The translations under genes and the position numbers were made by a program. From Phallusia mammillata (lineage: Eukaryota): a stretch of DNA of 64,000 nt. The notes beneath the pieces were generated by a model that made no database searches, had not been told where the DNA came from, and saw nothing but the letters and a program-made list of their open reading frames with translations. Positions 46 through 30,715 of the stretch are shown here, piece by piece. Position 1 is the first letter of the stretch. Every line of letters begins with the position of its first letter. The stretch spans positions 28,706,001 through 28,770,000 of the forward strand of contig OZ281496.1 of NCBI GenBank assembly GCA_965637545.1, given 5' to 3'.

Positions 46-1188
46 CTGCAATCAACCCAAAATCTTGTCGAGATGTTGCACCTCGCTATGCAAACGACAC
101 CGGCGGCGTTTATACGATTTATCCACTCACTGGAGGGCGACAGGGAGTTAAAGTTTACTGTGATTTTGTGACAAACAGCACCGAATGGCTGGTAGGGTGA
201 ATGCTTGTGCATTGAGTATAAAGGAAAAATACAAAAAGTAAATCAACAGGTGTTCCAGAAAAGGAAAGATGGGTCAGAAGACTTTGAGCGTGAGTGGGTT
301 GATTACGTGAACGGATTTGGAAAACAAGATGGCAAATTCTGGTTGGGTAAGAGTTTCGCCATAACGTTCTCAATGGCTCTGATGTAATGAACCTTACCAC
401 AGCTACGTGCTAAGTAGGCAGCAAGTAGGCAATTGGCTGGGTTCTCACTTTAAGTTGCGAGCTGCGTTTTGAGAGGGGCAAAAAGTTACTTTTGTTGCAC
501 GTGCATGCATCTCGTAAGCCGTTTAAACACTTTTATCTCATCCGCATTTTACCGTTGTTATTGCGACCTACCTACTAGTTGTGGAGTATTTGATCTGTCA
601 ACATTGTCGCAAACCCCGTTTGCTTTCCAGGTCTTGAAAATCTGCACTTGATAACAAACAGTGGCGATTATGAAATGAGAGTTGACATGGAGGACTTTGA
701 TGGAATAAAATCTTATGCGCATTACGGGTGTAAGATTCGATTTTACAACAATCATGGTATTTAGACTAACCTGTGCCTGTCGCAACTATTTCAGGATATT
801 TTCTGTTGGCCCAGGAAACGACTATGCTTTAACACAAGGCAGTTTTTCCGGACCAGCGGGTAAGTAAGTAAATAACTAGTTTTATTTTAGAATGTGCAAA
901 TGCGTGCACCAGTTATCTAAAAACGAGGGAAATCAAGTTTGTTATTTCTTGCAACCCACTGGTACAAGATTCTCCACAAAGGACAGAGATCAAGATACAC
1001 ATTCAGGAGGGAATTGTGCTCAGTCTTACAAAGGTGGTTGGTGGTTTACAGATTGTCATAGTGGAAATCCCAACGGATATTATTATGGTGGTCCACATGA
1101 CTCATATGCTGATGGTGTTAACTGGTATTATTTCCGTGGTCACCACTATTCACTTAAAATAATGGAAATGAAAATCAGAAGAAAGTAA
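46..1188 (+). CDS. Ficolin-like fibrinogen C-terminal (FBG) domain gene, copy 1; 5' exons lie upstream of the window. Exons 46-191, 250-346, 631-727, 795-859, about 938-1188
   Basis: GT-AG exons join in frame to give [66 protein letters not shown]../[36 protein letters not shown], a canonical FBG domain. The first four exon sizes (146/97/97/65) are identical to copy 2. The last-exon acceptor is uncertain (see findings). Confidence 0.85.
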
Positions 1189-2175: not shown

Positions 2176-4175
<2,000 letters not shown>

Positions 4176-6905: not shown

Positions 6906-9900
6906 ATGGCTCGAATATTAACGATTGTTATCTTTCTGCTGCCGACATTGGGAAGCTACGTAATAACGCCACTGAATGGCTTCAAGGCCATAAGGACGTG
7001 CAAGACTTTTGACGAAGCGAAAGAACCAGAATGTGCAAGGTTTTGCATCACAAAGGAGAGGCCAGAGTTCAACAGGTCCGTGGCAGGTAGGTTTAAAACA
7101 TTTGGTAAATATTACATTAGAATGGTTTATGTGCTGGCTTGCTTGTTGTCTGTATTCTATCAACAAGGATTCTAAAATGGCACTCTGAATCAATCGACGA
7201 GTTCGAATTTTTTTGGCTTCTTGCAACAAATTGCGATCTTTTTAATTTCTTTGCGATGCATTATTTTATGTTGTGGCCTGTGTGTTCTATATTCGGTCAG
7301 CGTGGACGCTCAAAACGATAACGCTTTAAATTAATTCAGCGAGCTCACAAATATGTTTTGGCTTTTTTCAAGAAATTTAGATTTATTTGAGATGCACTAG
7401 GAAACAAACTAAGCCAATATCAACAAAAGTCAAGTTGCATAAACTTTAAGGAAACGCATTTTCAGCCATTACAAACGTTTGAGTCACACGTAGCATCTCT
7501 CCACAGAACCCACACAAAATCAAACACTGTTTGCTAAACTCAACAAATCTCATTATTGTTTCGGAGTAAAGTTCAATTAAATGATTTTCAAACTTCATGT
7601 GCATATTTGGACAAGTTTATCGGTTGTTTGCGCTGAACATGTAAAGCCAATAAAGATATTAGTCACGACCCACTGACATACATATGTTCATGCTTATAGT
7701 AGTGTGAATAACATCATTGATATTTTAAATGCATTTATAAGAAGCCAGCTAACCAATCAAGAAGAACGTATGATTTTTTGCAAACTACATGAAAGTAACA
7801 AAGATTGGTTTAAAAAAGTTTTTAGAAATTCTTGTGACATTAAATTCCATGGTTGCTAAGATATATTAAGATTTAATCTCAAGTTTGTGTGTTTACCTGT
7901 GTCCTAATAAGGGCGCAGCAAAAGTAATAATGACGCATACTAAGGCGTTCACCAAGATTCGCTTGTTATGGAATAAACACCTCCGGATAGATTTTCCGAT
8001 CGTTAATCGCAGTGATCTTCGCCGCAATCATTTGTCAACGTCACACACGCTACATTTGGCGGGAGTTTGACGGACGCTAATTGGACTGCCTGGAAAGACT
8101 ATCGAATAAGTTCACCAGCGAACCACTTTTACGTCAGCAAACCCAAAATTTATAATAGAGATCTTCAGCGAAGGGATCCGACGTCTACTTAAGGTTTACA
8201 TGTTCAATTTGAGCCACATTTAGACGTTTTAACTTTAAAGGTCTGGCGAACGACGCACAAAGTAGACCACATCTTGGCATCAGACATGGTGGTCTAAGTA
8301 TTAAACGGAGTGAGAGGTTTTATGTTGTTATGATTTGATCTATCCGTTATCGCCGCAATTTAATTGCATGGTTAGGCGCATGAATTAGCGGATGTGAGAA
8401 ACATTCAGTCCATTTTTTGAAACATTGCAAATTTTTGTTCAACGAATAACGGAGCCTGTTTGAGAAGTCAACCCTTCTGCACCATGGTAAAAACGTCAGA
8501 TAACATTTATATGATTAGTATGGTTAATTATATGGTTAATTTTTTTACATCATTTGACACGCACATGTTCTTCTTCATAACACTTGATTAATATCCTTGA
8601 AAAGTAGCCACAGCTTTACAACGTGAATGTTTTGAAAGTTCTGAATTGTACTTTTGAAAACAAAGTATGTTTTTGGTTTCAGCAAGCATACGGGTGCTAG
8701 CTCGATTGTTTCGCTACGAAATTGTTTCCTACGACAAGAACAGCGAAACATTATCGTGGAACACGAAAGGAGTTCAGGAAAGCTTAAAAAACAGCTTGGA
8801 CAACGTGACTGTCACCGCATACCACTGGAAACAGTAAGCAAGTAACAGAAATACGGAACTGTAATCCAATAGTTACGTATTTTAACTAACTCACATCATA
8901 ACATATGTACTGTAGTTTACTATTCCAAAAACCTTTGGTAAGGCTCATCAGCTGGCAATTATGCAGCTGTCTTGTGCATTTATGAGAGCAATGGAAACGG
9001 TCCTTGAAATCCTAATCAGTCGTTTGTGGTTTTGTCATCTATCCAACCGTTTTCCTCTAATCATGAACCACTCTTTTCAATAATGCTTGACCGCGTATAG
9101 TTTATTAACATCACCATGCAGTAAAGCAAACCTCCGAAGCGGTCGTTTGTTGTTTTAGTATTTGACGGTTTTCGTAGAACTTTAATCAACAGTTTGGACA
9201 ACGTACCACACCAAGCAACAGCGTGGGGCAAATAGGATTATAGTTTACGCTTGGTTTGATGTACGCATCATATCGACTGTCAAAGAACAGCTTTACTAGA
9301 AATCGTAGCAGACGCGCAAACAAGTGAAATAAGTCGAAACCAGCAAATGTTTCAGCATATTCGAGTTCTCATTTTGTTTCCACCTTCACACTAAAGCTTT
9401 TTCAAAACAACGATTTCGTTGTATTAACGTTATTCAGACTAGATGTAATACAAGTGAAACTTATGACTAATGTTTGACGTCAGTTGGCGGTCTTATTCAA
9501 AATTCTGTTGTGACTGGTTCCATCGCACACAAGTACAGCTGCAATGACGTCTTTGTGTGTCATTCGAATCTTTTTTCTCTTGACTGAAAAATCCAACATG
9601 CTTGATATGTAAAGATGGGTTGTTTGCACGTTTAGCGCTAAGGAAGGCCGACTGGAACTCACAGAGTCGGGACGGCCGATTATGAGTTGTTGTGGAGTTC
9701 CTCTGACGAAGAATCATTGCAAGGTTGCGTTTGATCACCCCGGTGAACTTTTCGTCTCAATGACCTTAAACAAGTTGAGGTTGGGTGCAGAAGTGAGCGC
9801 TTACAGATACGGTAAGTATTAGCATAACAGGGCATCATGTTTTCTCGTCCCCTGATTGGATACAGTTTCACACTGCTTGTGTGCTAATGAAAGTATCTAT

Positions 9901-12900
9901 TAGCTTCTAATGGTTTATCAACGTAAATAACATAATAGCCTATACCTGGCGTTTAAAAATCGCCAATGCGTAAAATGTGTTTTTCTACCTCGTGATTAGA
10001 GATATTTGATAACTTTATGTGTAGCCTAGTTGATGAACAAATCAACACATATGATCCAAATCAAAGTCAAATTGGTGCCATCATTGCATGCCGGATTTAA
10101 ATCATAACAACATTTAAATGCATGCAGCAGTCTGTTCTGCATTTACGATAAATAAAAAGAGCATTGTACTTCACAAGAAACCCAATCACAATTTTACCAT
10201 ATAGACCCCTAAAGACAGATAAACCAGAACATTTAAACGGTCAATTAGTGCAAACATGCAAATATTGGACATTGTCGACACAAAATAAGAACCAGTTGTT
10301 AATAAGATACATCAATATGTTTTAAGCACCACTCTGCTGGATGTTAAATAACGTATACGCACACAAAGTTTACGAAAAATTGCCCAACGGCGAAAAAGTT
10401 TATTTTAGAACCCGTTTCTTCGCAACCTAAACGCTTTAAAGTTGATCCAATTTTTTCCAGCTGAACGGGGAACAACTAATTATACAAACCACTGGGGTGT
10501 GTAGGGTGATAGGGGACCGGGGGCTGCAGTGAAGTGGGATGTTACCCCAACAGAAATTGGTGATCGGAAACGAGGCCCCTTGTGTAGATTACAAACAAAT
10601 GTTGCTGGGTGGCGTTTTGCTCATTATACATCAGTGATTCCTAAACGTTTAGGAAATGATTCATTTAATTTTTAAAATACCTCCAATCTTCTAAAAATGC
10701 CAATTGTTGCTCACCACGCATCAGTGATTCTCAAACGTTGAGCAAAATTTCAAAATACCTTGAAGGTTCTAAAATTGGCTAATTGTAGCCTTCTTGGTGA
10801 TTTCACAAGTCTTTAAAAGGGGTACGCATACAAAAAGGTTTGAAACCATGAACATAACGCAACGAGGAAGTGTGCGTGGGTATGAAGTAGTGGATTCGTG
10901 GTTGTTTTATTACTTGCACAATCGAAACGAAAGATTGCAACCTGATTGTCTGACTGTTAAATTTTTGAGGTAATTTTCGCCATTTAATATTTGACATACG
11001 ATACTGTTACACAGTTTCAACGTAGCAATTTCACGGTGATTATGCTCTTTTCTTAAACGTCAAAAGTGCCTCAATATAACATAAATCCGAAATTTGTTTC
11101 AAGTCCTCTACTTTCACTGCAACTACACAAATATATTTCTGTTTTAGTTTATTATCGTTACGAAACGATATGCCCTGAAATCAAACCCAGCGACAAGGAG
11201 GTCGCGTGCATCGTGCTGGATAAAAAGACGGGTGCAATAAAACAGAAGACCATGATCGTGGGATTCGCGAACACTGGAGGCCAAGATAGTCGATTTCAAA
11301 CAGAAGTAGAAATGTGTTCCTTTTCCTTGTCAGCAGGTAAAATCAGCCGTTGAATAGTTGGTTTTGCCTATAAACAGCCTCAGAAATGTAGTAGGAAAGA
11401 CGCTTGGTTTGTTATATACCTGAATGACAACAGTAAATGCCAAACGTTGTAATATTTGAGTTGTACAAGTTTTACATCAAACTTGTGGTTTAAGGTAGGC
11501 CACTTACGGCACATATATCCAAGCAGTTTATAGTCTTAATATTGTTCACGTAACAGACCGTGGGAGTAATACCAGACTTAAGGCGCCTTGTTGGGAGAAC
11601 TGTAATAATTCTGTGGTGTAAATATAAAAACAACTTTGCAAGGAGGATCTATAAAAAATATAGCCGGTATATTCCGTCAGTCGACCGCCACAACAACACT
11701 TCGTGGCAATAGGCTACAACTCGCCGTTTAGGCTACGCCAAGGAATACCAAACAAACTATAGCCACCAGACAAGTTAATTGATACAATAGCTCATGAGCA
11801 GGAATTTAACATTGACAAATGGGGTTCTGGGCTCTAATTATAACTACCTGACAAAAACTCCTCCAACAAACCTCTTTGGTGCATATATGGGCCGCATGTG
11901 ATGTTTTGGGTTGGTAAAACCTTCCGTAGAAGCGATCGAGCAGGTGCATATATGGAGCGTATGCAGAAAGTAAACAGTATGATAGTTAGGGGGAAACGCA
12001 AGAGTGAACATTGCTTCTTGCTCCTTAATCAATTTGAATGGGTAATGGTCTAAATCGGGTAAACCCGTACATGGAAAATCGGGTAAACACGATTAGGCTA
12101 CCTGCAAAGAAAGTTATCCATGTTCTGTGAAAAATTTGTTTTCCAAGCCGGCAGTCCTGTTTTTCATGAGAAAAGTGTAGACATTTTGTCAAAAAACGTG
12201 ATTATTAGCATCGTACTATTAATGTTTATGGACCAATTAAATATCAAAATATTTAATACTAAACGATATGTGATTCAACGCAAAATCAAATTTAATGAGC
12301 CTTTTCAGCATCATGAAAACACAACTGATTTTTTCCCTGTACAGTTGTAGAACTTGTTCAAATAAACCTGTGGAAATTTGAATTTGTTTCCATGTCTCAG
12401 TGCTAGACCAGGGTGTGGAAGACTTGTTTGACTTATACTGCTCTCTAGTGATTTCATTTACAGGAGGTTAAATCCTAATAGCCAATAAAGCTAAAACATA
12501 CCAAATTCATTTGACAGAAATCGCCAAACACGGGATTGGCGTGAAAAGGTTGGATGGTATTTTTGGAAAGAAACTGGTCGACGCAACAGACTATTTGCAA
12601 ACTCAGGAGCAAATCTGTCCAACTTGTAATTGTACCAAAGAGAAATTTAGTCCTGGAAATCCGACAACGTTCAAGCCGAAAGACCAAGCAAAATGTTTTC
12701 ACTTCGTAACAGGAGAAATTTTAAAACCGAAAGTTTACTGCCTTCTACCACCAGGTTAGTTTTCTATCAGAACTTTTTTATTGTGATAAGACCACAACTT
12801 TTAGACCTATAAGGTCTGGAGAGCCGTTGGATAGGAACACTAACCTATAAGGCTCATCTCTCGTCACCAACTGCACTGAGGTAGAAACAGTGTTCACTGT

Positions 12901-13677
12901 CTACAGCTTATCATTCACTGGCTTGATGCCTTTACATTTTTTTTTATTGTGGCTTGGTTTAAAATTAGTGATGCTTACAACCGTAATGTCACTTTATTAT
13001 TATAGTTATGTTTAAATATCTTCGTGATATAACCCTTGATTTTTCGCAAATGTAAGGAGCAACTTTTTTTGCATGTATGAAGACATGTTAATTGATGGTA
13101 TTTATTCCAGAGGTCAGAGCAGAAACGATTGGGGAGCAATATCAAAGTCACACAGAGTACAAACAAGACTACACAATTCCATGCCTGATAGGCGGATTGG
13201 CGCTAGTTTTCATGGCACTTCTGGCAGTTGTATGCTGGCGTAGACATGCCAAAAGGAAGCGTAAAGAGAAAAAACAACGTTGGTCCGAAACGGTAAGATC
13301 AAAGAAGTAGAGCCACATAAAAATGTGGTAATCAATAACACGTGCGTCAGTTCAGGCCATGTAAGGGTAAACCTGGACACTCATACGCAATATATTTCAG
13401 GTTCATCACAGAAACTATTGAAATTGTTAGAAACAAGCCAAAACTTATAACTGCAGAGATACACGATCGCGTATTGTTGTGTCCTGTGTTTTTTAAAAGC
13501 TTTATTTGTTTGTGAGCAGAAATGTTGGTATCAAACCGATCTTTTCTCGATTGTTTAGGTATAAAATCTAAAAACGTACTTCAAACAGTACAAATTCTTT
13601 TTTAGAATGAAAAACCCGATGTAAATGAAGACATCGCCTTGATTACAACGATGCATAGCAGAAATGAAACTCTTTAG
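6906..13677 (+). CDS. Uncharacterised Cys-rich type I membrane protein, short-tailed (receptor A), 395 aa. Exons 6906-7086, 8683-8833, 9636-9811, 11148-11336, 12518-12754, 13111-13292, 13606-13677
   Basis: All junctions GT-AG, phases 1-2-1-1-1-0, total 1188 nt open frame. Signal peptide MARILTIVIFLLPTLG, 14 ectodomain Cys, TM IPCLIGGLALVFMALLAVVCW followed by RRHAKRKRKEKK. Exon-by-exon similarity to receptor B supports the model; the terminal exon is the least certain. Confidence 0.85.
10629..10800. repeat. Degenerate tandem duplication of a unit of about 90 bp in intron 3 of receptor A
   Basis: catcagtgattc..aaacgtt..aaaatacct..ttctaaaa recurs at 10629 and 10719. Confidence 0.55.
12804..12908. 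repeat. Rearranged, inactivated copy of the hammerhead-containing repeat (family 1)
   Basis: On +: tctcgtcaccAACTGCA-CTGAGG-TA-GAAA-CAGTG-TT-CACTG-TC-TACAGCT (about 12859-12908) matches the 30664-30715 ribozyme but lacks stem II. Opposite-orientation stem-II fragments lie upstream: gacctataaggtc (12804) and cctataaggctcatc (12844). Confidence 0.7.
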
Positions 13678-16945: not shown

Positions 16946-17848
16946 ATGTGGTCAATGTCTAATCACCAGGTGCATTGATGAGACTTTGAAAGCGCAATAC
17001 TGTGTACTATCTGCAGCTTAGAACTTTATACACAAGTTTAGCAAGGGCTAAGTACACTAACTTTAACCCAAATAATGTTCGGTTTTGCATGCAAATTCGT
17101 TAGAGCGATGCTTCATTGCAGTGCCACAGAGCAAGTATACAACAGTGCCATGGGAGAATGCAATGGTCAACCGATGCCTCGTTGCCTTCTGTACACAAGG
17201 GTGGCGCGTAGGAGATATGGTTGCTTCTGGCAAAAGGGCGAAACGGAAAAGAGCGCGTACAACAGCTGCATGATGATAATAATCTCAATGTACATTTTAC
17301 ATTAAAACAAAGGCCATTGCGACTTTTGCAACTAGTACAAAGCCAAGCATGTCATGCAATAAAACAAAAGCATTAAAACGCCGCAATGACGGAGCTAAGA
17401 AACTAAACTACATTTCGGTTCACATAAGTTTAAATGGCACCCAAACACCAACTAACCGCCAAACCGTTTTGTTTGTTTGTTTTAACTTATTGGGTAGAAA
17501 TAAACAGGTTCCGCTAATGGATAACGTTGTGGGCAAGGTGCAGCATTTGGGAAATCAAAGCAGACGAATTGAAAATAGTTACAATATGGACGTGTACACA
17601 ATAACTGGTCCAAAACAGAAAGTAGAATTTAAATCTTGCTTTAATTTCATCGACTGAAAACAAAAGCCGATCAAAATAAGCATTAGGCATTCAAAGTTCG
17701 GCTTAAAAGGCCAAGCTTGCCAAATGCCGCTTTTCGAAGCGGTGTGGTGGTCACCGTCTTAAATTTGTGAGCTTAACAATCATACAACCTCGGGTTTTAT
17801 ATACTTTCGGTCATCAGGTTGTGTCCGCACCAGGATTTTCCAGTGGAG

Positions 17849-17854
17849 TTTATT
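17849..17854 (-). promoter_or_regulatory. Possible polyadenylation signal of receptor B
   Basis: AATAAA on the minus strand about 77 nt downstream of the stop at 17931. Confidence 0.4.
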
Positions 17855-17930
17855 TCATATTTCGCAGAGTCCAAGTAATATTTTGCGAGCCGAAAATTCT
17901 TTTTTTCTCAACAAATTGACACTTTCAGTG

Positions 17931-20438
17931 TCAATGAGCAAGTAGACTATAATCAGGCAAAGCTTCGCTCTGCGACAAATGACCAACGGCCGAATCCGTA
18001 CTAATGTGTTTTGATTTGGCGAAAAACATGTTATGGATCATTTTCTCAGATCCAGGTGGTGGTCCGACCGCAGTGCCCATCTTAAGTTCATCGAACACAT
18101 CGTCCCCGAACGACAACCGATCGTCAGGTTTGCCGAAATCCGAGGGCTCACTTCCCGCGTCAAATGGAGAGGAATTCTCGAAGCTCGGCATATCTGTTTC
18201 GTTCTCGCTGTTACAGCCGGCGGAACCGCGGCCAGTATCTTCTGAAGTCTCGGAATGGCGACTGGACGGTTCAAATCGGATTGAGTGATCAATGTCTGCA
18301 ATGCCGGCGCTTGTAAGACCTGATGACACACCGCTGCTGGAGCACATGCTTTCAGGAATGTAGTTGTCAGTGAGGCCACTGGAGTCGTCAGTAAAAGAGC
18401 TTGATTGTACCTCCGGCTTGTCGAGATAGCCTTCAACAGTTGAAGGAACAAAGTCAACAGAATCCGTACGATTTTCTAAAAAAACAGGTTTGAATAACCT
18501 TCTGTTTAAAGACAAGCGTTTTATGCAACAGCTTGCATGACACATCAAGTGTTTTAACAAACAGATTTCAAAGATGTCCCGTCAAAAAAACAAACCAGCC
18601 AACGAGTCGGTTTAAAAATGATAATCTGTAGTGAAAGATTCAAATATCACCAGCGCGAATAGCCTGCATGCTTTAACCAGGTTTTAAATATGCAAGTTAG
18701 AAGAAAAGAAAGTTTTTTTGACCAAACAATTCCGTGTCTAACGTTCCTAAAATTTGAAAGCACTGGTAATATCTAAGACACACCCCGAATTGTGAATGCA
18801 CTTGCTCTTACTGCTTCTCTTTATCTTGGTGAAAATTTTCGACAAACGCTTGCAAAAGACCATTAGGCTTAAAAATATAAAAGCCAAAAATGAGTGGGCC
18901 CAAAAGAAGTTGAATGCTAAGTTTACGCTAAGTTTAACGCATCATTTCTTTCCAATCTTTCTCCTGGTGCATTTATTCGTTTCATGCTATTTGGTCATCC
19001 TGATTTAACAGACGCTCACACACTGTCATTATCCCATGCTGTTCATAAATATTTGCGTGCATGTAACAGATTTTGATTTCTGCTGCCGTTTTATTGACAT
19101 TTAGCCTCTTTCGTTCGCTTTTCCTCTTTTGTTTACTATTATTATCGACTACCCTTTACCTGAAAATACATTTATTTCTCGTATGGTGACACAACAAAGG
19201 ACAGTTTTCAGTTTCCAGACTGTCGTCTGATTGTCGTAAAATAATAAATAAAAAACTGCCTGTGCAAAAAAAAGAAGTTGAATAAGGTTTCATATTGTCC
19301 ATTCGACAGACGCCGTTATTAATAGTTTCAGCGCACCTGGCCATGTAACTAAAATTTGATAAGCATCGACAGTTGTACCTCGTCTGTAGTAATTTGGGGA
19401 TATCGCGTTGCATTCGACAAAACAAAGTGAAAATGGGTATTGAAGGCATTTGAGTAGGGATAAAGGAAAATTCTTGAAACCTTTGTTGATAAATTGTGTT
19501 CACGAGAGATATTTCATGTCAATTGTGTTCAAAGAGCTGATCGATGTAAAATGCCATTACCAAACGCAAATAATCTTTTGTTAGACTTGACAGTTTTTTT
19601 TGCCCTGTGTTCGGCTTACAATTTATACGCATATGTTTATTGACGGGGGAATTCCGAAAGCAAAGTGTGTTCGATTGAATGTGGAGTGACGAATATTTGT
19701 GATACTAAACAAAATACTATAGTTGTTTTTCAAGAACTTATTCGTTTATTTGCTGTATAGGCTACTGTTACTAGCCAACCAGAAGCTTACCTAGTTGGGG
19801 ACGATTACCGATGTTGACATCAGGAACATCTACTTCGTGTCCAAACTCATTTTGAAGAAGAAAGTGTTTTTCTTTATCGGGCACTAAATACAAAAATCCA
19901 ATTGTCAATTTTATCAAAGTAGGCCACGGGAAAGAACATGTAAGTGCGGGGAAATAATAGAAACGGGAAGCAAAAACAATGAATAATACCCCACGCTGAC
20001 GTCAAAACAAGGTGAAATTAAGTGATGGTAAAACAAGGTGGGTTAAAATAGCCCACGACTCCGTCACCAAATGTCAGTTGTCCTGACAATGGGAAATGAC
20101 ATTTCACCCAACCCTGACAAACACACAAATTCTACATACACCAAATTGGGTATTACGCAGTGTGGGTCATTATTCAGATTAGGTGTAGCTAACTGGAATG
20201 GAACTGCTACTAATGTGTTGTCAACAGAGCGTTAATTAAAATGCCAACATTGTAGCACTATAAAGGAGTCGGTCAATAATCAGGCTTGAAAATGACCTTG
20301 ATCCCATTCGCAGCTGAAGTTAGAATTGAAATGTTGACGCTAAAATTTCACGGTAGGGCTTTTGTTTCCAAACACTAGCATTAGCGAAGATAATATTTGT
20401 CGCCTGTTAAAACGTATCAACCTGATAGATAAAAACTA

Positions 20439-20473
<35 letters not shown>

Positions 20474-23400
20474 CTCTACCAAGTCAGGTTCATCGTCTGG
20501 GATATGTGACTGATTGATAAATGACATTTTGCTCATCAGTTTTGCACGAATTTTAATCTGCTTGCCCAAATTGTATGGAGTCAAACAATAGGACACAACG
20601 AAACATCGTATTATTTTATAATTTTAGAACAGATTTTGGTCGACCTGATTAAACACCCTTATTGGGCGGATGTAATATCTAGGGCGTGCATATAGGATAT
20701 GAGATTTTCGGAGCGCATTTTTGTTCTTGACCACCCGTTGCAGTAGTTGATATTTGAGCTAGCAATTCGCGTGGTCTCACAGGTGACAGTTTATCTTGAC
20801 AAGGAAGCACTGTGTGGTACCCGCTGCTGCACGCGACTTCCTTTCCCGTTATTCGACAAGGCGTTGCATGGCCGAATCCGATACCTCATACCCCTTTCTC
20901 CAATCTATGTGGTCTGCTGCGACATTATGAATAAACAACAGGCATTGTTACGCTTTGGAGAAGGACGCCCGTACTATTGTTTGGATCTCGATGCGGTTTT
21001 TGCCATTTTCCTGACCACCAATGCAACCGCTATGCATTAAAGGAGTAGAAGGAGAAAAGACACTGGATTTATACCGCTAAATTAACCATTTTTCTTAAAT
21101 TAAAATTAAATTGCACCAGTTTTCATAAGGTGAGTAATATGTCGCAATGACAATTTCTCGACAATGTTAATGCACGGTACACGTTAGGCCTTACGGAAAC
21201 AGTGCTCTATTATGTTAATGGAATTTATACGAGAGTGAAGGGTTTTGTTGTTTGCGCAGTATAAATATTGTGATATGGGTAACGGATTTCGTTAATATCT
21301 AAAACCTACTTGGTGTGTAACTACAAAAGTATTAGTGACGTTTTTCTTACGATTTACCGGTGATGACAACCCCATTTACCAAAAACAAATCGTGTTACTG
21401 AAGCTACAAAGTCATTTCTCTCATGCTGTTTGCCAAGGTAACTTTCTCTCAAGTTATCGACGGTTCATGCTACAGTTCAGGTACGACTTCCTGACACCAA
21501 AAGCAGTAGAATCTCATTGACGCGCGACAATTTTGCGTGAGGCGCAGACGCCGGGGAACCACGTGTGTGTTGTAATACTGCCCATAAAGTAATCATTCTT
21601 AAATGGGCGACAAGTGGATTTTGCGAATATACGGTTTTACAGCAATCGCCCTTATAAAATTCTCTTAAGCATTGTACGTGTGTCATACGGAAATAAAATA
21701 ATCTTTAAAATCACCTATACCGCTTATGTTAAGGGTTAAGACTATGCGGACCTATTTTTTCACTGATGATTCTAAGCACGACTGTTGGATATTATACTGC
21801 ATGATTATAGTGCATATTTCTTACAGTCGAGCATTTGATTGCGTCCTGAAAAAAAAATATTAATGCGGCTAACCGCATAAAAACATTAGCAAATTGGTTA
21901 TGCAATTAACCGAATTCGTCTTTACTTTAAGTGGAAGGTTTAGGTCGCAGCCGAGAATACCAACCTAATTTATCAGCAGTGCACAAATTAAGCGGTTCGG
22001 CTTCTTCCTTATACTCATCACTGGTGACAAAATTGCCACCGCTTCTGTTGCCAGCCAACGTTTTTTCCATGTCCATCTGCAAATAAATTACCACAATGAC
22101 AACATTGTAATTCCATCGCTTGCATAGTGAACCTCAGTTAAACCGGATGCAGTTATTCCGAATCTTCGCCTAATTCCGACAAAACTTGAGATACAGATGT
22201 AACGCCAGTATAACTACTTTTATTATTTATGACAATTTTTAAAATATTTGTCAAAAAGCTAGTAATAATTATTGACCGCAAATTTTATCGTGCAAAGCAG
22301 TATAATATACTACTTGGGATGACGTCTAAAAGGACAATGCTAAAAGAATAAACAACTTGGATACGAAATAGATGCACTTGGAAAAAAAGCCGCCTATCAT
22401 AAGGAACTAAATCTCGTGGTATATGAAATGTATCAACTAACCTGCGGATTTGTAAGAATAAATAGACTTACCACTGAAGGTGGCATTTTTGTAACGGTTC
22501 CTATAAACTTTCGAAATTTTCCGGATACGTTGTAGGTGCCAAATATCAGTATCAAAAGGAGAATGACACCACCAATTATGCAGAGAAATATCACTAAAAC
22601 CAAATCTAGAGAATCCGCTTCAACTTTGTCTTTTTCAGGCGCAGCAACAGTTACTGCATAGAAAAGAGGAGATGTTGTATGTTAAAACTTTGCAAATACA
22701 ACAACTAAATACGAATTTTTTTAGTATGAATTTTTTTAAACACTTCCTAAGTTTCAGTCTCAAGTCGGGAACAAGTACTAAATTCTTTTCTACGAAAAAT
22801 CAATGGCCCCGGGCATTTTTGCAAGTAAACGTGGACACTTAACGAAGCAAACTGGGGTACTGCCTTAAACATTAGAGCAATAGGTTATGTTTAAACACAA
22901 ACGGTGAGTTACGCCTCATCGGGACGAAAATTAGGGCCCACACTCGAAAGTAAAAGGGCGAAAACATTCAAACTTTTTAAAGCAACCTAAAAGTAATGTC
23001 AACCATCGTTCCATTACCGCATAAATGTAAAGTATCGAGTTAGGCCCAAATCAGGTCCGTTTCAATAATTACCTAGAACCGGTTTGGTTATCGCTGGCTT
23101 AAGAACAAAGCGAAAACGTAGCACTTGATCAGTAGAGCACGAAAACGGCGTATTTAACATGACATTATCAGGCTTTTTAGTTTCCCGTTAATAGTGGCGT
23201 TGTAGGTGTTGCAGAGCAGGTTGTTTGTGTGCCTTAGTGTCACATGTGTTTTTTTCGGATCCATTCTGGTATTTTTTACTTCGATTTATTTCCTGCTTAT
23301 AGAACTGATGAAGCCATGTTGTATGCAGAGACAGATTTAAGAGTGCTGTAACTTACAGATGCGATATATACAGCACAAGCCATCTATTTTTTTACCATTT

Positions 23401-26400
23401 CCTGGCATGCAATACTGCTCCATTTGTGCATCAGACTTTCGCGAAGTGGCCTGGAAACACAAGAGGTGTCCAGGCTTGGTGGTCTCATTAAGATTAGGAT
23501 CAAGACTGATATTCTTAATAGAGCAGTTTCGTTCGCCAGATTTTTCCCAATACTTGGTTACCGACCATACTTGTCGATTAAAGAACATGCTATAGAGCCC
23601 ATCTGTCAGTTTTGTTCCATTCCTTTCAACATTATCTACAAATATAAAACAGTAAATGTCTAAGATCGTCAATACACAAGTTGTCTTATCTGAAAGATCT
23701 CGTCAATACACAAGTTGTCTTATCTGAAAGAAGCTCCCCAATGCGGCCCACGAACACTCAACAACAATTGTAGAATTTTGTCAGATTTTTATCTAACTAT
23801 AATATATTTTTTCTACTTTTCATAGTGAAAGCTATGATTTAAACAGACATTTACAGAAATTAAATTTATAAATAAAAATTCATATGTTATAAACAGAAAC
23901 GATAGTAATTAAACCGTTCCTCAAGGCGTTAAGTTTCAGTCAAGGGCGTACAACCTGCAGCCGTACGGCCACATGTTCATTAAAATATATGTGCTGGCGG
24001 CCGTGATGTAATCAAAACTCCTTTGCCAAATATTTTGATTTTCAAACTGCTCTAAACAGATTTTATATCACTGAAAAGAGTACAATGTTACCAGCTTAGG
24101 AGCCATGTGCGTCAGACTTTTTTGTAGACCTATTGTGTGCAAACAATGGAAAAAACGTCACAATATAGATTATGACGTCATAAACAGTTAAAACTGATCT
24201 TCACAGTTGGAAATTAATCTGGGCTTTTGGGGCGTCAATATATGGCATATATATAATTATGATGTAAACCTATTTCTGTAATTTTAAAACAAAAACCAGC
24301 AGGTAATAGGTGACTGGTGGTGAAATTAGGATCTACAATGCGGCCGTCGTAGCGAAAATGTTGTTTAAGTGTATAAAACTAGATTAAAAATCACATGCGG
24401 CCCTCGGCATAATTTCCAAACTGCAATGTGGCCCCCGAACCCCACGAGTTTGACACCCCTGGTATAGATATCTATTAGAGATGTCGTTAAACGTCTTCAG
24501 ATTCAAGAACGGAAGACATCGAAGCAGCATGGTAAAAACAAAGTGAAAAAAGTGAAAACATTTACTCAAGCCAGTTGCATATAAACGATCTGTTTTAAAA
24601 AAAGACCATCATTGGAGTTACAAATTTAATCTCGAAAATAATTGACAAAACTGTCAACACAATATTGTGCAGGTTTTCGATACCCAACTTCCAGACATGC
24701 TACCCACTCATCTCAGCATAAAACGGCCCTCCAAAAACACAGAAAGCGATTAAAATTCGAGATCCGCATAAAATATAAATGAATACAGTGTGACTTCGCT
24801 CTAGGACCAGAATGGCGAAAGTGAGAAACAACGACCTATTTTGGGAAAAGTTTAACATTAACAGTGTTATTTACCTTGACGAAGGCCACCTGTATAGGAC
24901 GTCGAAACGTCGGATTAAAAATACTTGACAGAAGAGCTCTATAAATGTACGAGTGAAAAAAATTGACAAAACAACCTCGTTTTAATGCGAAAATGGATGC
25001 TGAAGGTACATGGTCACTTTATGAGTGCGAACGTACCCAAAGCTGATCCAAAACATTGTTGGGGTCAAAGTGATCTGTAGTCTTTTAGTAAGATCCCACA
25101 ACTTAGAGCAGTGGTTCTTAACCTTTTTTATAACGGCCGAACCCCTGCCATATTCTTCAGCCTTTGATCGAACCCTAAAGTTACATCCAAGGTTTTTAAC
25201 CCATTTTGTTTTGCGGGTCGTAATTAGTTTTTGTTTCAACGTGATGTGGCAACAGTTACTGTTTGTCATTTTTTTGTCAACAAAGAGCACGCGCACAGTG
25301 CTCTTTGTTACGTCAAAAAAGAAAAGAAAACCTTATAGTGCAGGGGTGCACAACATTTTGCAAGGATGGCCGCATTGCAGATTCTTATTTCACCAACGTC
25401 CGCCATTTACCCGCTTTTTTTGTTTCAAAATACTTGGTTTATGTCATATATATACCATCTAAATAGCGCCCAAAAAGCCCAGAATATCTAGCTTGGTGCA
25501 CAGCTTGGAGTTCAGTCTTAAGTGTTTATGATGTCATAATCTATATTGTGATGCTTGTGGTACCGGTTTTGTTCGCATTGTTTGCACACAATAGGCGTAA
25601 AAAAAGTGTGACGCATATGGTTATTAGGCTGGTAATATTCTTTTTAGTACCAAAAAAACTATTTAGAGCAGTTTAAAAATCAAAATATTTAGCAAACGAG
25701 TTTTATTTACGTCACATATATATAGTTTTATTTACGCCTGTACATATATTTTAATAAACATGTTCACGGCCGCACAAACTCGACTTGTGCACCCCTGCCT
25801 TAGTGTAAGCTTCGAGCGTTTTGATATTTGGCAAATAGAAATGCCATTTTTAGCGACTATAGACCCTAAAGTTTGATGAAAACGAATATTTGTATTGTAC
25901 TTCAAAAAGACCTTCGTCGAACCCCTGGGGTTCGATCGAACCCCGGTTAAGAACCACTGACTTAGAGTGTTAGTTTCAACTTTTAAAAAATACTCTTACG
26001 CGTTTTATACGACACACATTTTACCAATTTGCGGCAACAACTTGGCCTGCAGCCATAAAAAAATCCCTTCAGCAGAAAAAAATGTGAGACTTAAATGGCG
26101 AAGTACGGCCAAACATAAAAGTCTGTAAAATCTTTCCATTCTGTCTACGATCATCGATTAAACCGTGTTTTAGGTTAAGTGATAGTATTGATAAAGCAGC
26201 AGTGTTTCTGAACCAAAGTTAGTGACAAAAACTGTTCCGCAAACAAACTTACGTTTCGGCAATTGGTAGACACAGAATTTTCCTATTTGTCCTTTCACTA
26301 CGTCCTTGGCGTATTCGGCTGCGCTAGTAACACCAAGTATACCTTGCAAGGCGTTGACCTCAATCGCACCAGTGCTTATGTTAACAAATAAACACAGCTG

Positions 26401-27525
26401 AATGGTGTCGTTTTTCCACCAGCAGCTCTTGTAAGGTTTTTGCTCTGAAAACGCAATTATTTTTGTTGAAAACAAATACAAGGTTAGATGTGTATTCGGA
26501 CGGCGAAATCTGTTTTGTGACTACAGTAAAAACGACACACACAGGGGACAGAACAAAATTGGTTGCCTTTAAAAAAACTGCTGTAAAATCAAAAATTGTT
26601 GTCACAGTTTGCCTAGCAGCAACATTTTATGTATTTATTTCAAGTTTAAGTAAGCGGGTGTACAAGTATAACAGGAACTTAATGACAGGACACAAAAAAT
26701 AGTCGTGCATTGTAGCTTTCCGGCAAACGCTTGAATGTATTGTTATAAACAAACTTACCAAGTTGTGCGACATGATACCGATAACCAATTCTCGTAACAT
26801 TACGCGTTAGACCGATGTAAAGTCTGCCGGCGTCCTTCACGGAAACTGAACAGTTTCTGGCTAGAATTGAAACGCCACAACACGTACGAATGGGCGTTCC
26901 AATAGCGTTTTCTCTGCACAAAATAATAATCTTTGTGATTTTGCAATATTTGTATACAAATAGGCTGTTTTCCATTTGCACGAAAAACCTACTCGGACAG
27001 AAAAAAAGTGGTGACCGTAATCCGCGATTGACGATTAGTTCCGTTCCTTTTAGGTGTCCATATCATCATTTCATTGGTTTTGTTGTAGTAGAAATCATAT
27101 AGGCGAACGGCCCTGGCTAATCTCTTAAAGTCGTCTAAACAAAACGTGAGTGAGTTTAGTGCTAGGTACCAAAAGTTTCCAAAGGTTCCTTCCAATCCAA
27201 AACTTCATGTCCATCTTACGCTTATGTATCCCGATATATTACAAAGAAATTTAACCGGGTTGTTTTGAACTTAGCAATATAACATTAACGGGATCGAATT
27301 CGAAACGACAGTGAAAAGTATCGACCTACTTTAACGCTTACAATCAAGGGCTTTGTTCTTACCTATGCTTATAGGATTTTTTTTATCTATAGACAAATCA
27401 TAGTGGCAGTAGTCCATGCATAAGTCACCAGTGACATTTCCTGGGCATTTTTTGACTTGACTGTACGATATTACTAAATCAAATACAATGAACAAGATGA
27501 AAATCCGATAACTTAAATCCAACAT
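17931..27525 (-). CDS. Uncharacterised Cys-rich type I membrane protein, long-tailed (receptor B), 576 aa. Exons (minus) 27525-27363, 27134-26993, 26913-26759, 26444-26253, 23635-23396, 22653-22472, 22076-21965, 18475-17931
   Basis: All junctions GT-AG, phases 1-2-1-1-1-0-1, total 1731 nt open frame. Signal peptide MLDLSYRIFILFIVFDLVISYS, 12 ectodomain Cys, many N-glycosylation sequons (NVT, NKT, NGT, NCS, NDT, NIS, NET), TM LVLVIFLCIIGGVILLLILIFG, and an acidic Ser-rich tail with four Tyr. The TM exon is 182 nt, as in receptor A. Confidence 0.88.
20438..20464. repeat. Poly(A) tract, about 27 nt
   Basis: Uninterrupted A run in the last intron of receptor B. Confidence 0.9.
23666..23730. repeat. 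34-bp tandem duplication
   Basis: tcgtcaatacacaagttgtcttatctgaaag occurs at 23666 and 23700. Confidence 0.85.
23941..24461. mobile_element. hAT-type MITE, older copy; inverted relative of 25341-25797
   Basis: Imperfect ends caagggcgtacaa ... tttgacacccctg. About 330 bp of its interior matches the reverse complement of 25341-25797 (e.g. aaactgctctaaa, cctattgtgtgcaaacaatg, cacaatatagattatga). Confidence 0.7.
24871..24918 (+). repeat. Degenerate minimal hammerhead motif (family 2, Penelope-like type)
   Basis: cc-TTGACGA-AGGCCACCTGTATAGGACGTC-GAAA-CGTC-GG; similar to 62149-62197 but with the C3 position changed. Confidence 0.5.
25109..25959. mobile_element. hAT-type MITE (outer element) interrupted by a second MITE
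   Basis: 15-bp TIRs cagtggttcttaacc / ggttaagaaccactg; perfect 8-bp TSD acttagag at 25101-25108 and 25960-25967. Confidence 0.9.
25341..25797. mobile_element. hAT-type MITE nested inside 25109-25959
   Basis: 13-bp TIRs caggggtgcacaa / ttgtgcacccctg; flanks ccttatagtg / ccttagtg (TSD with a 2-nt indel). Confidence 0.85.
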
Positions 27526-28619
27526 TTCTTCAATGGACCTCAACGATATGCTGAGAGCATTGGATTCCTATAATGTAACAAATAAGATGTAATTAACTCA
27601 AAATGCTACTGTTGCTTGTTGACTCACAAAGATGACATACTTTCTAATGCGATTTAAAAAAGTAAAACAAATGCTATGGAATTATTCACGCAACATAACT
27701 ATTAAAGGGTGCTTTAAAATAATCGATTTCGGGCACTTAAACGCGCTGAACTATGTTAGAGTTGAATCGCATGGCAAAAATTTATTCATAATAACTCGCT
27801 ATGCCTTGCTGCCTTTCTGTACTACTGTTAAAGCAAAAAGTCAAAGCAACCCATTCCACGCGTCTGCCGCGTTCAGAGGGATGTTTTACCAGTCAATATC
27901 ACAAATATCACAAGTTACAACCAACCGTCACGTAATGATAAGGCTCTGGCAAAACACCCGTAAAAGACAAAAATATATCTGATGCTACAGAACAGTCTAT
28001 AGAAATGAATGCTATATTTGTTGATGTGCATACATTAGTGCTACTAGTATAAACGGTTCTAAAGTAATTATTTTTGCTGATAACCAGATTGCTGGAAGCC
28101 ACGTACATGTTTTAAATTCCAACAAATCAGAGTAACATAACTAATTTTTCATGAGGTCCAAACACAAAGCTGGGACCATTGCACAGCAAATCTAACTATA
28201 ATACTGTGACGGTGACCGTTACTGTGTTCGTTTTTAGCTTCAACTTTCATTTAAACGCGCCTAAACTAACTAACAAATGCTGTTTAAGCTTTTCTGTATA
28301 TATTGTACCCTTGCAATTGATGGTAAAGGTTAAACCACATGTAGTTCGGAATTTTTTCGTCGGGGAGTTTCTGAAACGCGCCCGGATACAGTACGTTTTG
28401 AAAAGCGGATGTCTATGCAGCTTAGGTCGTAATGCACATTGCAGAGCGTTGCAGAGAGCGCTCAGAGCTACCTTAGCTCATGTGGCGAGCGCATAGAAGG
28501 TGCTGGGCTTTTTACGTGAGCCGCCATGTTGCCAGAGAGGTGGGGAGAAAAAATAAGCGATCGGCAGAAAAAGCGCCGTTATAGCTGGTGAGCGCGGTCT
28601 TCCTGCCTGCTGCCAGGGA

Positions 28620-30663: not shown

Positions 30664-30715
30664 AGCTGCAGACAGTGCACACTGTTTCGACCTATAAGGT
30701 CTCATCAGTGCAGCT
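30664..30715 (-). ncRNA. Type I hammerhead ribozyme, intact core
   Basis: Minus strand: AGCUGCA (stem I) CUGAUGA GACCU-UAU-AGGUC (stem II) GAA ACAGU-GUGC-ACUGU (stem III) C, cleavage site, UGCAGCU (stem I). All conserved core nucleotides are present, the three helices pair perfectly, and the cleavage triplet is GUC. Confidence 0.88.

What the first reader, a model, noticed from the sequence alone, without database searches (positions are those of the whole stretch)
21965..22653. Receptor B has a Box1-like motif exactly at the phase-0 end of its TM exon, as in class II cytokine receptors
The TM exon ends ..FRKFIGTVTKMPPSV|MDME. From memory, class II long chains carry PxxL Box1 right before a phase-0 intron (IFNLR1 KMPRAL|DF, IL10RA KLPSVL|LF, IFNAR2 LPKVL|NF). 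A Box2-like PLNLC follows about 30 aa later. Exons 2-3 are split by a phase-2 intron and show an FN3-like pattern (IW/LSW strand, VTVT strand, C..C, hydrophobic strand), fitting the first half of the 1-2-1-0-1 cytokine receptor intron rule. Caveats: the second split is phase 1, exons 4-5 do not look like canonical FN3, and there is an extra N-terminal 3-Cys module. If correct, this is an interferon/IL-10-receptor-like JAK-coupled pair outside vertebrates.
Basis: inference. Interest (0 to 1): 0.75.

Follow-up and report, generated by a model that had tools for sequence, protein, structure and literature searches.

The report
Sea-squirt receptor with JAK-docking-like tail
This is a real, transcribed sea-squirt gene for a single-pass surface glycoprotein whose exon layout and membrane-proximal tail look like an interferon/IL-10-type receptor, but no sequence or fold test I could run shows that it belongs to that family.

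Summary
The TM exon ends in phase 0 at ..KMPPSV|MDME. PLNLC lies 31 residues further on and fits the published Box2 rule (Glu, then aliphatic residues at +5 and +7). Intron phases are 1-2-1-1-1-0, against 1-2-1-0-1-0 for class II cytokine receptors.

A convergent paralog, Receptor A (6906-13292, + strand), has the same inferred phases and the same 182-nt TM exon. It has no proline there and probably only a short basic tail, so a "JAK-coupled pair" is not supported for A.

Box1-like plus Box2-like motifs at the right spacing occur in 1-2% of shuffled tails.

Against membership:
- The Box1 leucine, invariant in vertebrates, is V or M here.
- The second domain is about 40 residues too long, and its intron has the wrong phase.
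- Exon-wise Pfam, PDB, Atlas and a 1.84-billion-protein search found no relative.
- Single-exon AlphaFold models were uninformative.

The whole spliced ectodomain has no reference, so it could not be scanned or folded. Class II receptors are already reported in Ciona and amphioxus.

Verdict: a plausible, very diverged cytokine-receptor-like chain (about 0.4), unproven.

The parts
27363..27525 (-). Receptor B exon 1: start codon, signal peptide and a 3-Cys module (C27, C36, C40). Ends in phase 1.
   Evidence: Joint 27134/27363 and a contig reaching 27463; translation.
26993..27134 (-). Receptor B exon 2: first half of domain 1 (..YYNKTNEMMIWTPK..ITVTT..). Ends in phase 2.
   Evidence: Joints; phases.
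26759..26913 (-). Receptor B exon 3: second half of domain 1 (CC..x8..C, LYIGLTRNV). It is the exon best conserved with paralog A (39%). Ends in phase 1.
26253..26444 (-). Receptor B exon 4: 64 residues with 3 Cys, phase 1 at both ends.
   Evidence: The AlphaFold model of this exon alone has pLDDT 53 and is inconclusive.
23396..23635 (-). Receptor B exon 5: 80 residues (..TKYWEKSGE.., LLCFQAT..x..QYC), phase 1 at both ends.
   Evidence: The AlphaFold model has pLDDT 54 and is inconclusive.
22472..22653 (-). Receptor B exon 6: stalk, TM helix (residues about 315-338) and a 20-residue juxtamembrane stretch. Ends in phase 0.
   Evidence: Joints 22653/23396 and 22076/22472; hydropathy maximum at residue 316.
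22472..22489 (-). Box1-like KMPPSV, the last six codons of the TM exon.
   Evidence: shuffle test.
21965..22076 (-). Receptor B exon 7: MDMEK..EYKEEAEPLNLCTADKL. Ends in phase 1.
   Evidence: Contig pieces that end exactly at 21965 and run on elsewhere.
21984..22007 (-). Box2-like EEAEPLNL: a Glu with Leu at +5 and +7, 31-32 residues after the Box1-like prolines.
   Evidence: the rule is taken from PMC5394478.
17934..18475 (-). Probable last exon of Receptor B: 181 codons, Ser/Asp/Glu-rich, with tyrosines in YLDK, YIPE and YSLL. The stop codon is at 17931-17933.
   Evidence: Only in-phase acceptor with a long open frame. About half of its words are held by RNA-like runs. The joint itself was not seen.
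6906..13292 (+). Paralog Receptor A. Inferred exons are 6906-7086, 8683-8833, 9636-9811, 11148-11336, 12518-12754 and 13111-13292, with the same phases 1,2,1,1,1,0. The TM exon is also 182 nt. The juxtamembrane stretch RRHAKRKRKEKKQRWSETV has no proline. There is a stop at 13305-13307 if the last donor is not used.
   Evidence: tblastn hit of B exon 3 at 9670-9810, E = 1e-5; splice sites and alignment. No RNA was laid on it.

Best explanation
Receptor B is an expressed eight-exon gene for a type I membrane glycoprotein of 576 residues. It has a signal peptide, an ectodomain of about 290 residues with 12 Cys and 12 N-glycosylation sequons, one TM helix, and a 238-residue Ser- and acid-rich tail. 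This much is shown.

I infer that it is a very diverged cytokine-receptor-like signalling chain of the class II (interferon/IL-10 receptor) type. The exons follow that family's order: leader, two exons for domain 1 split in phase 2, two for domain 2, a TM exon ending in phase 0 just after a P-x-x-hydrophobic motif, then tail exons. In this reading the juxtamembrane stretch would hold the single tunicate JAK constitutively. The aromatic KFI and then MPPSVMDM would lie on the FERM F2 lobe, and E-x4-L-x-L on the SH2-like domain.

A ligand would bring B together with a second chain, most simply the neighbouring short-tailed paralog A acting as a non-signalling accessory chain, or with another B. 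JAK would then phosphorylate the tail tyrosines (YKEE, YLDK, YIPE, YSLL) as docking sites. Ligand, partner, JAK binding and STAT use are all inferred.
For: - The spliced transcript and all exon ends come.
- Phases are 1-2-1-1-1-0 against 1-2-1-0-1-0 for the family (PMC8863823; bioRxiv 10.64898/2026.05.30.728932), so 5 of 6 match, including the unusual phase 2 and phase 0.
- The TM exon ends ..KMPPSV|. In human IFNLR1 the boundary falls after PxxL, inferred from variant 2 in PMC13399965.
- The Box2 rule of PMC5394478 (Glu, aliphatic at +5 and +7, 20-40 residues after Box1) is met by EEAEPLNL.
- Both motifs together at that spacing occur in only 1-2% of shuffles.
- The Cys pairs C114-x8-C123 and C277-x15-C293 are conserved in paralog A. 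By my own knowledge of the family, not a tool test, they sit where its domain 1 and domain 2 disulfides lie. The Trp to ITVTT to LY spacing fits an FN3 domain on the same basis.
- A long-tailed and a short-tailed paralog lie tail to tail.
- Ciona has one JAK (PMC3296744).
Against: - No Pfam family matches any exon, even at E <= 10.
- No cytokine receptor appears in the PDB by sequence with single exons or with A+B profiles.
- The Atlas gave no usable hit.
- Exon 5 has no true relative among 1.84 billion representatives.
- The Box1 Leu is invariant in vertebrate class II receptors (PMC5394478) but is V or M here, and the favoured Phe is D or M.
- The fourth intron is phase 1, not 0.
- Exons 4+5 encode 144 residues, against roughly 100-105 for a canonical domain 2.
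- There is an extra 3-Cys module and an extra tail intron.
- Paralog A has no proline at the equivalent place.
- There is no YxxQ motif.
- All motif tests are post hoc, on a finding picked out of a very large scan.
Confidence: 0.4

Rival explanations
1. A and B are a lineage-specific pair of surface glycoproteins, for adhesion, recognition or endocytosis, with no link to JAK. The Box1/Box2 likeness and the phase pattern are coincidences of a short proline motif, an acidic tail and the usual phase-1 bias of ectodomain exons. On this reading the terminal YSLL would be an endocytic or SH2 motif.
For: - No relative or family was found by any sequence search.
- P-x-x-hydrophobic near the membrane occurs in 23% of shuffles.
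- The motif is absent from paralog A.
- The invariant Leu is missing.
- Domain 2 is atypical.
- The finding was selected from a scan of very many windows.
Against: - Box1-like and Box2-like motifs at the right spacing occur in only 1-2% of shuffles.
- The motif ends exactly at the phase-0 exon end (2.8% of shuffles), as in IFNLR1.
- Five of six phases and the exon order match the family.
Confidence: 0.38
2. B is a member of another beta-sandwich receptor class, such as a class I/gp130-like, Ig-like or other FN3 receptor. It would signal through a different kinase or adaptor, and exons 4 and 5 (both phase 1-1) would be separate shuffled modules rather than one domain 2.
For: - Exons 4 and 5 are symmetrical 1-1 exons with 3 Cys each.
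- Exons 3 and 4 share a loose pattern, P-x-[KR]-[ST]-C..C-x-hydrophobic..G (not significant).
- The low-confidence models show mostly strands.
Against: - There is no WSxWS motif and no PxxPxP Box1.
- No Ig, FN3 or other Pfam hit on any exon.
- hhalign finds no internal repeat (probability 0.07).
Confidence: 0.12

Closest known systems
Vertebrate class II cytokine receptor long chains (IFNLR1, IL10RA, IFNAR2)
   Same: - Type I topology and the same exon order.
- Phases match at 5 of 6 introns.
- The TM exon ends in phase 0 right after P-x-x-hydrophobic, about 17-20 residues from the membrane.
- A Glu+5/+7 aliphatic Box2 lies about 30 residues later.
- The tail is long, acidic and Ser-rich, with a few tyrosines.
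- A related short-tailed chain lies next to it.
   Different: - There is no detectable sequence or Pfam similarity.
- The invariant Box1 Leu is V or M, and Phe is D or M.
- The intron inside domain 2 is phase 1 and sits about 30 residues earlier than I recall for tissue factor (my own knowledge).
- Domain 2 is about 40 residues longer.
- There is an extra N-terminal 3-Cys module, 12 Cys in all, and an extra intron in the tail.
- There is no YxxQ motif.
Class II receptors already reported in invertebrate chordates (Ciona GI:198428337; amphioxus BjCRFB1/2; one on another piece of this genome, note s1-375392)
   Same: Invertebrate chordate, single-pass receptor, no established ligand in tunicates.
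   Different: Those were found by BLAST or HMM similarity to vertebrate receptors (PMC3210801; bioRxiv 10.64898/2026.08.17.745176). This one is invisible to such searches. I could not compare it with them directly because none of their sequences was on hand.
Short chains and tissue factor (for paralog A)
   Same: Same ectodomain type as its long-tailed partner, with a cytoplasmic tail of about 20-25 residues.
   Different: Vertebrate short chains (IL10RB, IFNGR2) still carry a Box1 for TYK2 or JAK2 (my own knowledge). A has no proline at all after the TM.
Class I cytokine receptors (gp130/Domeless type)
   Same: A membrane-proximal proline motif and a Box2-like hydrophobic patch.
   Different: No WSxWS, no PxxPxP, no Ig or extra FN3 domains.

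Membership tests
Class II cytokine receptor (CRF2/CRFB) | Ectodomain of two FN3-type domains recognised as Tissue_fac (PF01108) plus Interfer-bind (PF09294) | tested here: inconclusive
   Pfam on eight single-exon pieces gave no family at E <= 10. The pieces are half-domains, so the power is low. The whole spliced ectodomain has no reference and was not scanned or folded. Single-exon AlphaFold models had pLDDT 53-54, and Foldseek on one of them was meaningless.
Class II cytokine receptor (CRF2/CRFB) | Intron phases 1-2-1-0-1-0 (PMC8863823) | tested here: not met
   Observed phases are 1-2-1-1-1-0. Five of six agree and the fourth is phase 1. Paralog A has the same inferred pattern.
Class II cytokine receptor (CRF2/CRFB) | One conserved Cys pair in domain 1 and one in domain 2 (positions from my own knowledge of the family) | tested here: inconclusive
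   C114-x8-C123 and C277-x15-C293 are present in B and conserved in A. Pairing and strand positions were not tested, and there are eight further Cys.
Class II cytokine receptor (CRF2/CRFB) | Box1 PxxLxF with invariant Pro and Leu (PMC5394478) | tested here: not met
   The sequence reads PPSVMD or, one residue on, PSVMDM. Pro is present. Leu is replaced by Val or Met, and Phe by Asp or Met.
Class II cytokine receptor (CRF2/CRFB) | Box2: Glu followed by aliphatic residues at +5 and +7, 20-40 residues after Box1 (PMC5394478) | tested here: met
   In EEAEPLNL the first aliphatic residue lies 31-32 residues after the Box1-like prolines. Box2 alone occurs in 10% of shuffles.
Class II cytokine receptor (CRF2/CRFB) | TM exon ends in phase 0 directly after PxxL (IFNLR1; inferred from variant 2 in PMC13399965) | tested here: met
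   The exon ends ..MPPSV| in phase 0, joint 22076/22472.
Class II cytokine receptor (CRF2/CRFB) | Constitutive binding of a JAK, and STAT activation on ligand binding | not testable with these tools
   This needs binding and signalling assays.
Class I cytokine receptor | WSxWS motif and proline-rich PxxPxP Box1 | tested here: not met
   Neither pattern is present in A or B.

The most novel reading that the evidence does not exclude
A and B are the two chains of a tunicate-specific heterodimeric cytokine receptor. It would have diverged so far from the interferon/IL-10 receptor family that only exon architecture and the JAK-docking Box1/Box2 grammar survive. B would be a second, hidden class II-type JAK-coupled receptor in the sister group of vertebrates, and a handle for finding an equally hidden helical cytokine ligand.
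Probability: 0.25. Interest if true: 0.7.

Novelty: new variant of a known kind. Interest (0 to 1): 0.5.

Why it matters
The origin of interferon/IL-10-type signalling is being pushed back to lancelets and lampreys in work from 2026. Tunicates, the closest relatives of vertebrates, have so far shown only one recognisable class II receptor and no ligand. If this pair is a diverged member, tunicates keep more of the system than sequence searches show. Exon phases plus Box1/Box2 grammar would then be a way to find such receptors. If it is not a member, it is a caution that short JAK-docking motifs and phase patterns can arise by chance.

Tried and rejected
1. Pfam on the eight exon pieces at E <= 10 found nothing.
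2. A full HMMER search of 1.84 billion representatives with exon 5 gave two hits. Both are summed weak matches to repeats, a tandem-repeat protein and a Sushi-repeat protein, with the Cys register shifted. I rejected both as relatives.
3. PDB sequence searches with exons 2 and 5, and with A+B profiles of exons 2, 3 and 5, returned only lectin, beta-propeller and other chance hits at E > 0.08.
4. ESM Atlas feature searches with exons 2, 3 and 5 gave no usable hit.
5. AlphaFold2 on exon 5 alone and exon 4 alone, each with the A+B alignment, gave pLDDT 53.6 and 53.3. Foldseek on the exon 5 model found nothing below E = 3.
6. hhalign for internal repeats (D1 against D2, E4 and E5) gave probability <= 0.1.
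7. I looked for a B-like tail downstream of A and found none.
8. Steps left out: Pfam, HH-type and structure prediction of the whole spliced ectodomain or of domain 1 (exons 2+3).
9. The word-indexed protein search was not used. Its length window (0.55-1.75 times the query) cannot reach full-length relatives from any stop-free piece of this gene.
10. Orthologs from other ascidians could not be fetched, so conservation of KMPPSV was tested only against paralog A.
11. The organism is coded in the run tables. 'Sea squirt' rests on earlier notes of this scan, not on a test of mine.

Full report
**Where it is.** The finding lies on the minus strand of an AT-rich (about 38% G+C) intron-bearing animal genome. 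Earlier notes of this scan call it a sea squirt. I did not test that myself, and the run tables code the organism.

**Gene model.** Four small runs (X1-X4) hold only 6-12% of the sampled words of 17900-27600, as expected of RNA. I laid them on 21800-27750. Their contigs give six joints whose skipped parts all read CT..AC on the + strand, which is GT..AG on the minus strand.

| Exon | Coordinates | Note |
|---|---|---|
| E1 | 27363-27525 | ATG at 27525 |
| E2 | 26993-27134 | |
| E3 | 26759-26913 | |
| E4 | 26253-26444 | |
| E5 | 23396-23635 | |
| E6 | 22472-22653 | TM exon |
| E7 | 21965-22076 | |

One contig (X1 record 1, 792 nt) links E3 to E7 in a single molecule. The finding's coordinates are exactly the outer ends of E7 and E6.

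Two contigs end their match at 21965 and run on (216 and 45 further letters), so E7 is spliced to something below 21800. The only acceptor in the right phase with a long open frame is at 18475, preceded by a T-rich tract, with 181 codons to a stop at 17931-17933. The RNA-like runs X1, X2, X16 and X17 hold about half of 17800-18480. I take 17934-18475 as the last exon, but that joint was not seen.

**The protein.** It has 576 residues:
- a hydrophobic leader;
- an ectodomain of about 290 residues with 12 Cys and 12 N-x-S/T sequons;
- one TM helix (about 315-338, the hydropathy maximum);
- a 238-residue tail with 22% Ser+Thr, 19% Asp+Glu and four tyrosines (YKEE, YLDK, YIPE, YSLL).

Intron phases after E1..E7 are 1, 2, 1, 1, 1, 0, 1.

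**The observation itself.** E6 ends ..GKFRKFIGTVTKMPPSV in phase 0, and E7 begins MDMEK. PLNLC follows, with its first Leu 31-32 residues after the two prolines.

**A paralog.** tblastn of B against the window finds one other match, exon 3 at 9670-9810 on the + strand (38% identity, E = 1e-5). Around it, open frames and splice sites give Receptor A with exons 6906-7086, 8683-8833, 9636-9811, 11148-11336, 12518-12754 and 13111-13292.
- The phases are again 1, 2, 1, 1, 1, 0, and the TM exon is again 182 nt.
- Identity to B is 28%, 39%, 22% and 22% for exons 2-5. The Cys positions are shared.
- A's juxtamembrane stretch is RRHAKRKRKEKKQRWSETV|, with no proline. If its last donor is not used, the frame stops six codons later.
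- No B-like tail lies downstream.
- A and B are convergent, with ends about 4.6 kb apart.
- A's model is inferred. No RNA was laid on it.

**Comparison with the published rules of the class II family.**
- The family's intron phases are 1-2-1-0-1-0 (PMC8863823) and 1-2-1-0-1 across the two FN3 domains in lamprey (bioRxiv 10.64898/2026.05.30.728932). Here five of six agree, including the two unusual ones (phase 2 inside domain 1, phase 0 after the TM exon). The fourth does not.
- Box1 in this family is PxxLxF. Pro and Leu are 'completely conserved' and Phe is favoured (PMC5394478). B reads P-P-S-V-M-D or, one residue on, P-S-V-M-D-M. The proline is there, the leucine is Val or Met, and the Phe position is Asp or Met.
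[quoted passage not shown] This implies that the human exon boundary falls after PxxL. In B the boundary falls after PPSV, the same place.
- Box2 is a Glu in the SH2 pocket with aliphatic residues at +5 and +7, 20-40 residues after Box1 (PMC5394478). EEAEPLNL fits this.
- An aromatic-hydrophobic pair (KFI) lies 8 residues before the first proline, much as the PWF site of IFNLR1 lies 7 before. This is inference only.

**How much is chance.** I shuffled the tail.

| Pattern | Share of shuffles |
|---|---|
| P-x-x-hydrophobic, 8-25 residues after the TM | 23% |
| P-x-x-[LV] | 11% |
| Motif ending at the exon end, or one residue before | 2.8% |
| Box2 pattern in the right zone | 10% |
| Both motifs at the right spacing | 1.0-2.0% |

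These figures are post hoc, and the finding was picked from a very large scan. They make the reading plausible, not proven.

**The ectodomain.** Some features fit an FN3 domain 1 and the domain 1 and domain 2 disulfides of class II receptors:
- the Trp in ..MMIWTP;
- the ITVTT strand 13 residues later;
- C114-x8-C123-S-V;
- LYIGLTRNV 48 residues after the Trp;
- KYWEKSGE, LLCFQAT and QYC near the membrane.

That resemblance rests on my own knowledge of the family and on conservation between A and B. It is not a test.

Every test I could run by reference was blank or uninformative:
- Pfam on the eight exon pieces at E <= 10.
- PDB by sequence with single exons and with A+B profiles.
- Atlas features.
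- A full HMMER pass over 1.84 billion representatives with exon 5, whose two hits are repeat artefacts.
- AlphaFold on exon 5 and exon 4 alone, with pLDDT 53.6 and 53.3 and mostly strands, and Foldseek on the exon 5 model.
- hhalign for internal repeats.

These are half-domains, so the power is low.

Against a canonical D200 module:
- exons 4+5 encode 144 residues;
- both are symmetrical phase 1-1 exons;
- the domain 2 intron is in another place and phase;
- there is an extra 3-Cys module;
- there is no WSxWS and no PxxPxP.

**What I could not do.** So Pfam, profile-profile comparison and structure prediction of the whole ectodomain, or of domain 1 (exons 2+3), were left out. The word-indexed protein search cannot reach full-length relatives from any stop-free piece.

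**What is known.**
- One apparent class II receptor was noted long ago in Ciona and amphioxus (PMC3210801, citing Krause and Pestka 2005).
- Amphioxus BjCRFB1/2 and lamprey CRFB7/14 were tested in 2026 preprints.
- Ciona has a single JAK (PMC3296744) and a gp130-like class I receptor (PMC1963337).

So 'outside vertebrates' is not new. What would be new is a second, sequence-invisible pair.

**Verdict.** The gene and the motif at the exon end are real.
- The most likely single reading (about 0.4) is a very diverged class II-type cytokine-receptor-like chain that docks JAK on MPPSV(MDM) and E-x4-LNL, with A as a short accessory chain.
- Nearly as likely (about 0.38) is an orphan tunicate surface glycoprotein whose likeness is coincidental.
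- A different beta-sandwich receptor class takes most of the rest.

It should not be filed as a member of the family. Two defining features were tested and not met (the invariant Box1 Leu and the fourth intron phase), and the fold is untested.

Noticed in passing
window 30665-30714 (- strand): The type I hammerhead noted by another reader (s1-375419) matches Rfam Hammerhead_1 over the full model (1-45). It scores only 22.8 bits against a gathering score of 34 (E = 0.0035 in a 401-base search). The whole-window scan at gathering scores found no RNA family at all.
   Followed up: partly
window 23989-24461, 24785-24983 and 25382-25978 (inside the 2.6-kb intron 4 of Receptor B): These stretches have much higher contig depth (up to about 200) than the exons. 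They have many loose ends and several variant letters in all four runs. They look like transcribed repeats or mobile-element pieces rather than part of this gene.
   Followed up: no
window 880-1185 and 3708-4172 (+ strand): Open frames with fibrinogen-related (ficolin-like) C-terminal sequence (..[20 protein letters not shown]..). This agrees with the neighbouring note on ficolin-like receptors.
   Followed up: no
window 26760-26912 and 26254-26442 (- strand): Exons 3 and 4 of Receptor B share a loose pattern, P-x-[KR]-[ST]-C, about 9 residues, C-x-hydrophobic-x-hydrophobic, then G-x-[LI]. This hints at a repeated module, but hhalign gives no support (probability 0.07).
   Followed up: partly
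window 21930-21964 (- strand): If the exon 7 donor at 21965 is not used, the frame runs on for 12 codons (..GWYSRLRPKPST) to a stop. A short-tailed isoform of about 408 residues, keeping the Box1/Box2-like part but no distal tyrosines, is therefore possible.
   Followed up: no
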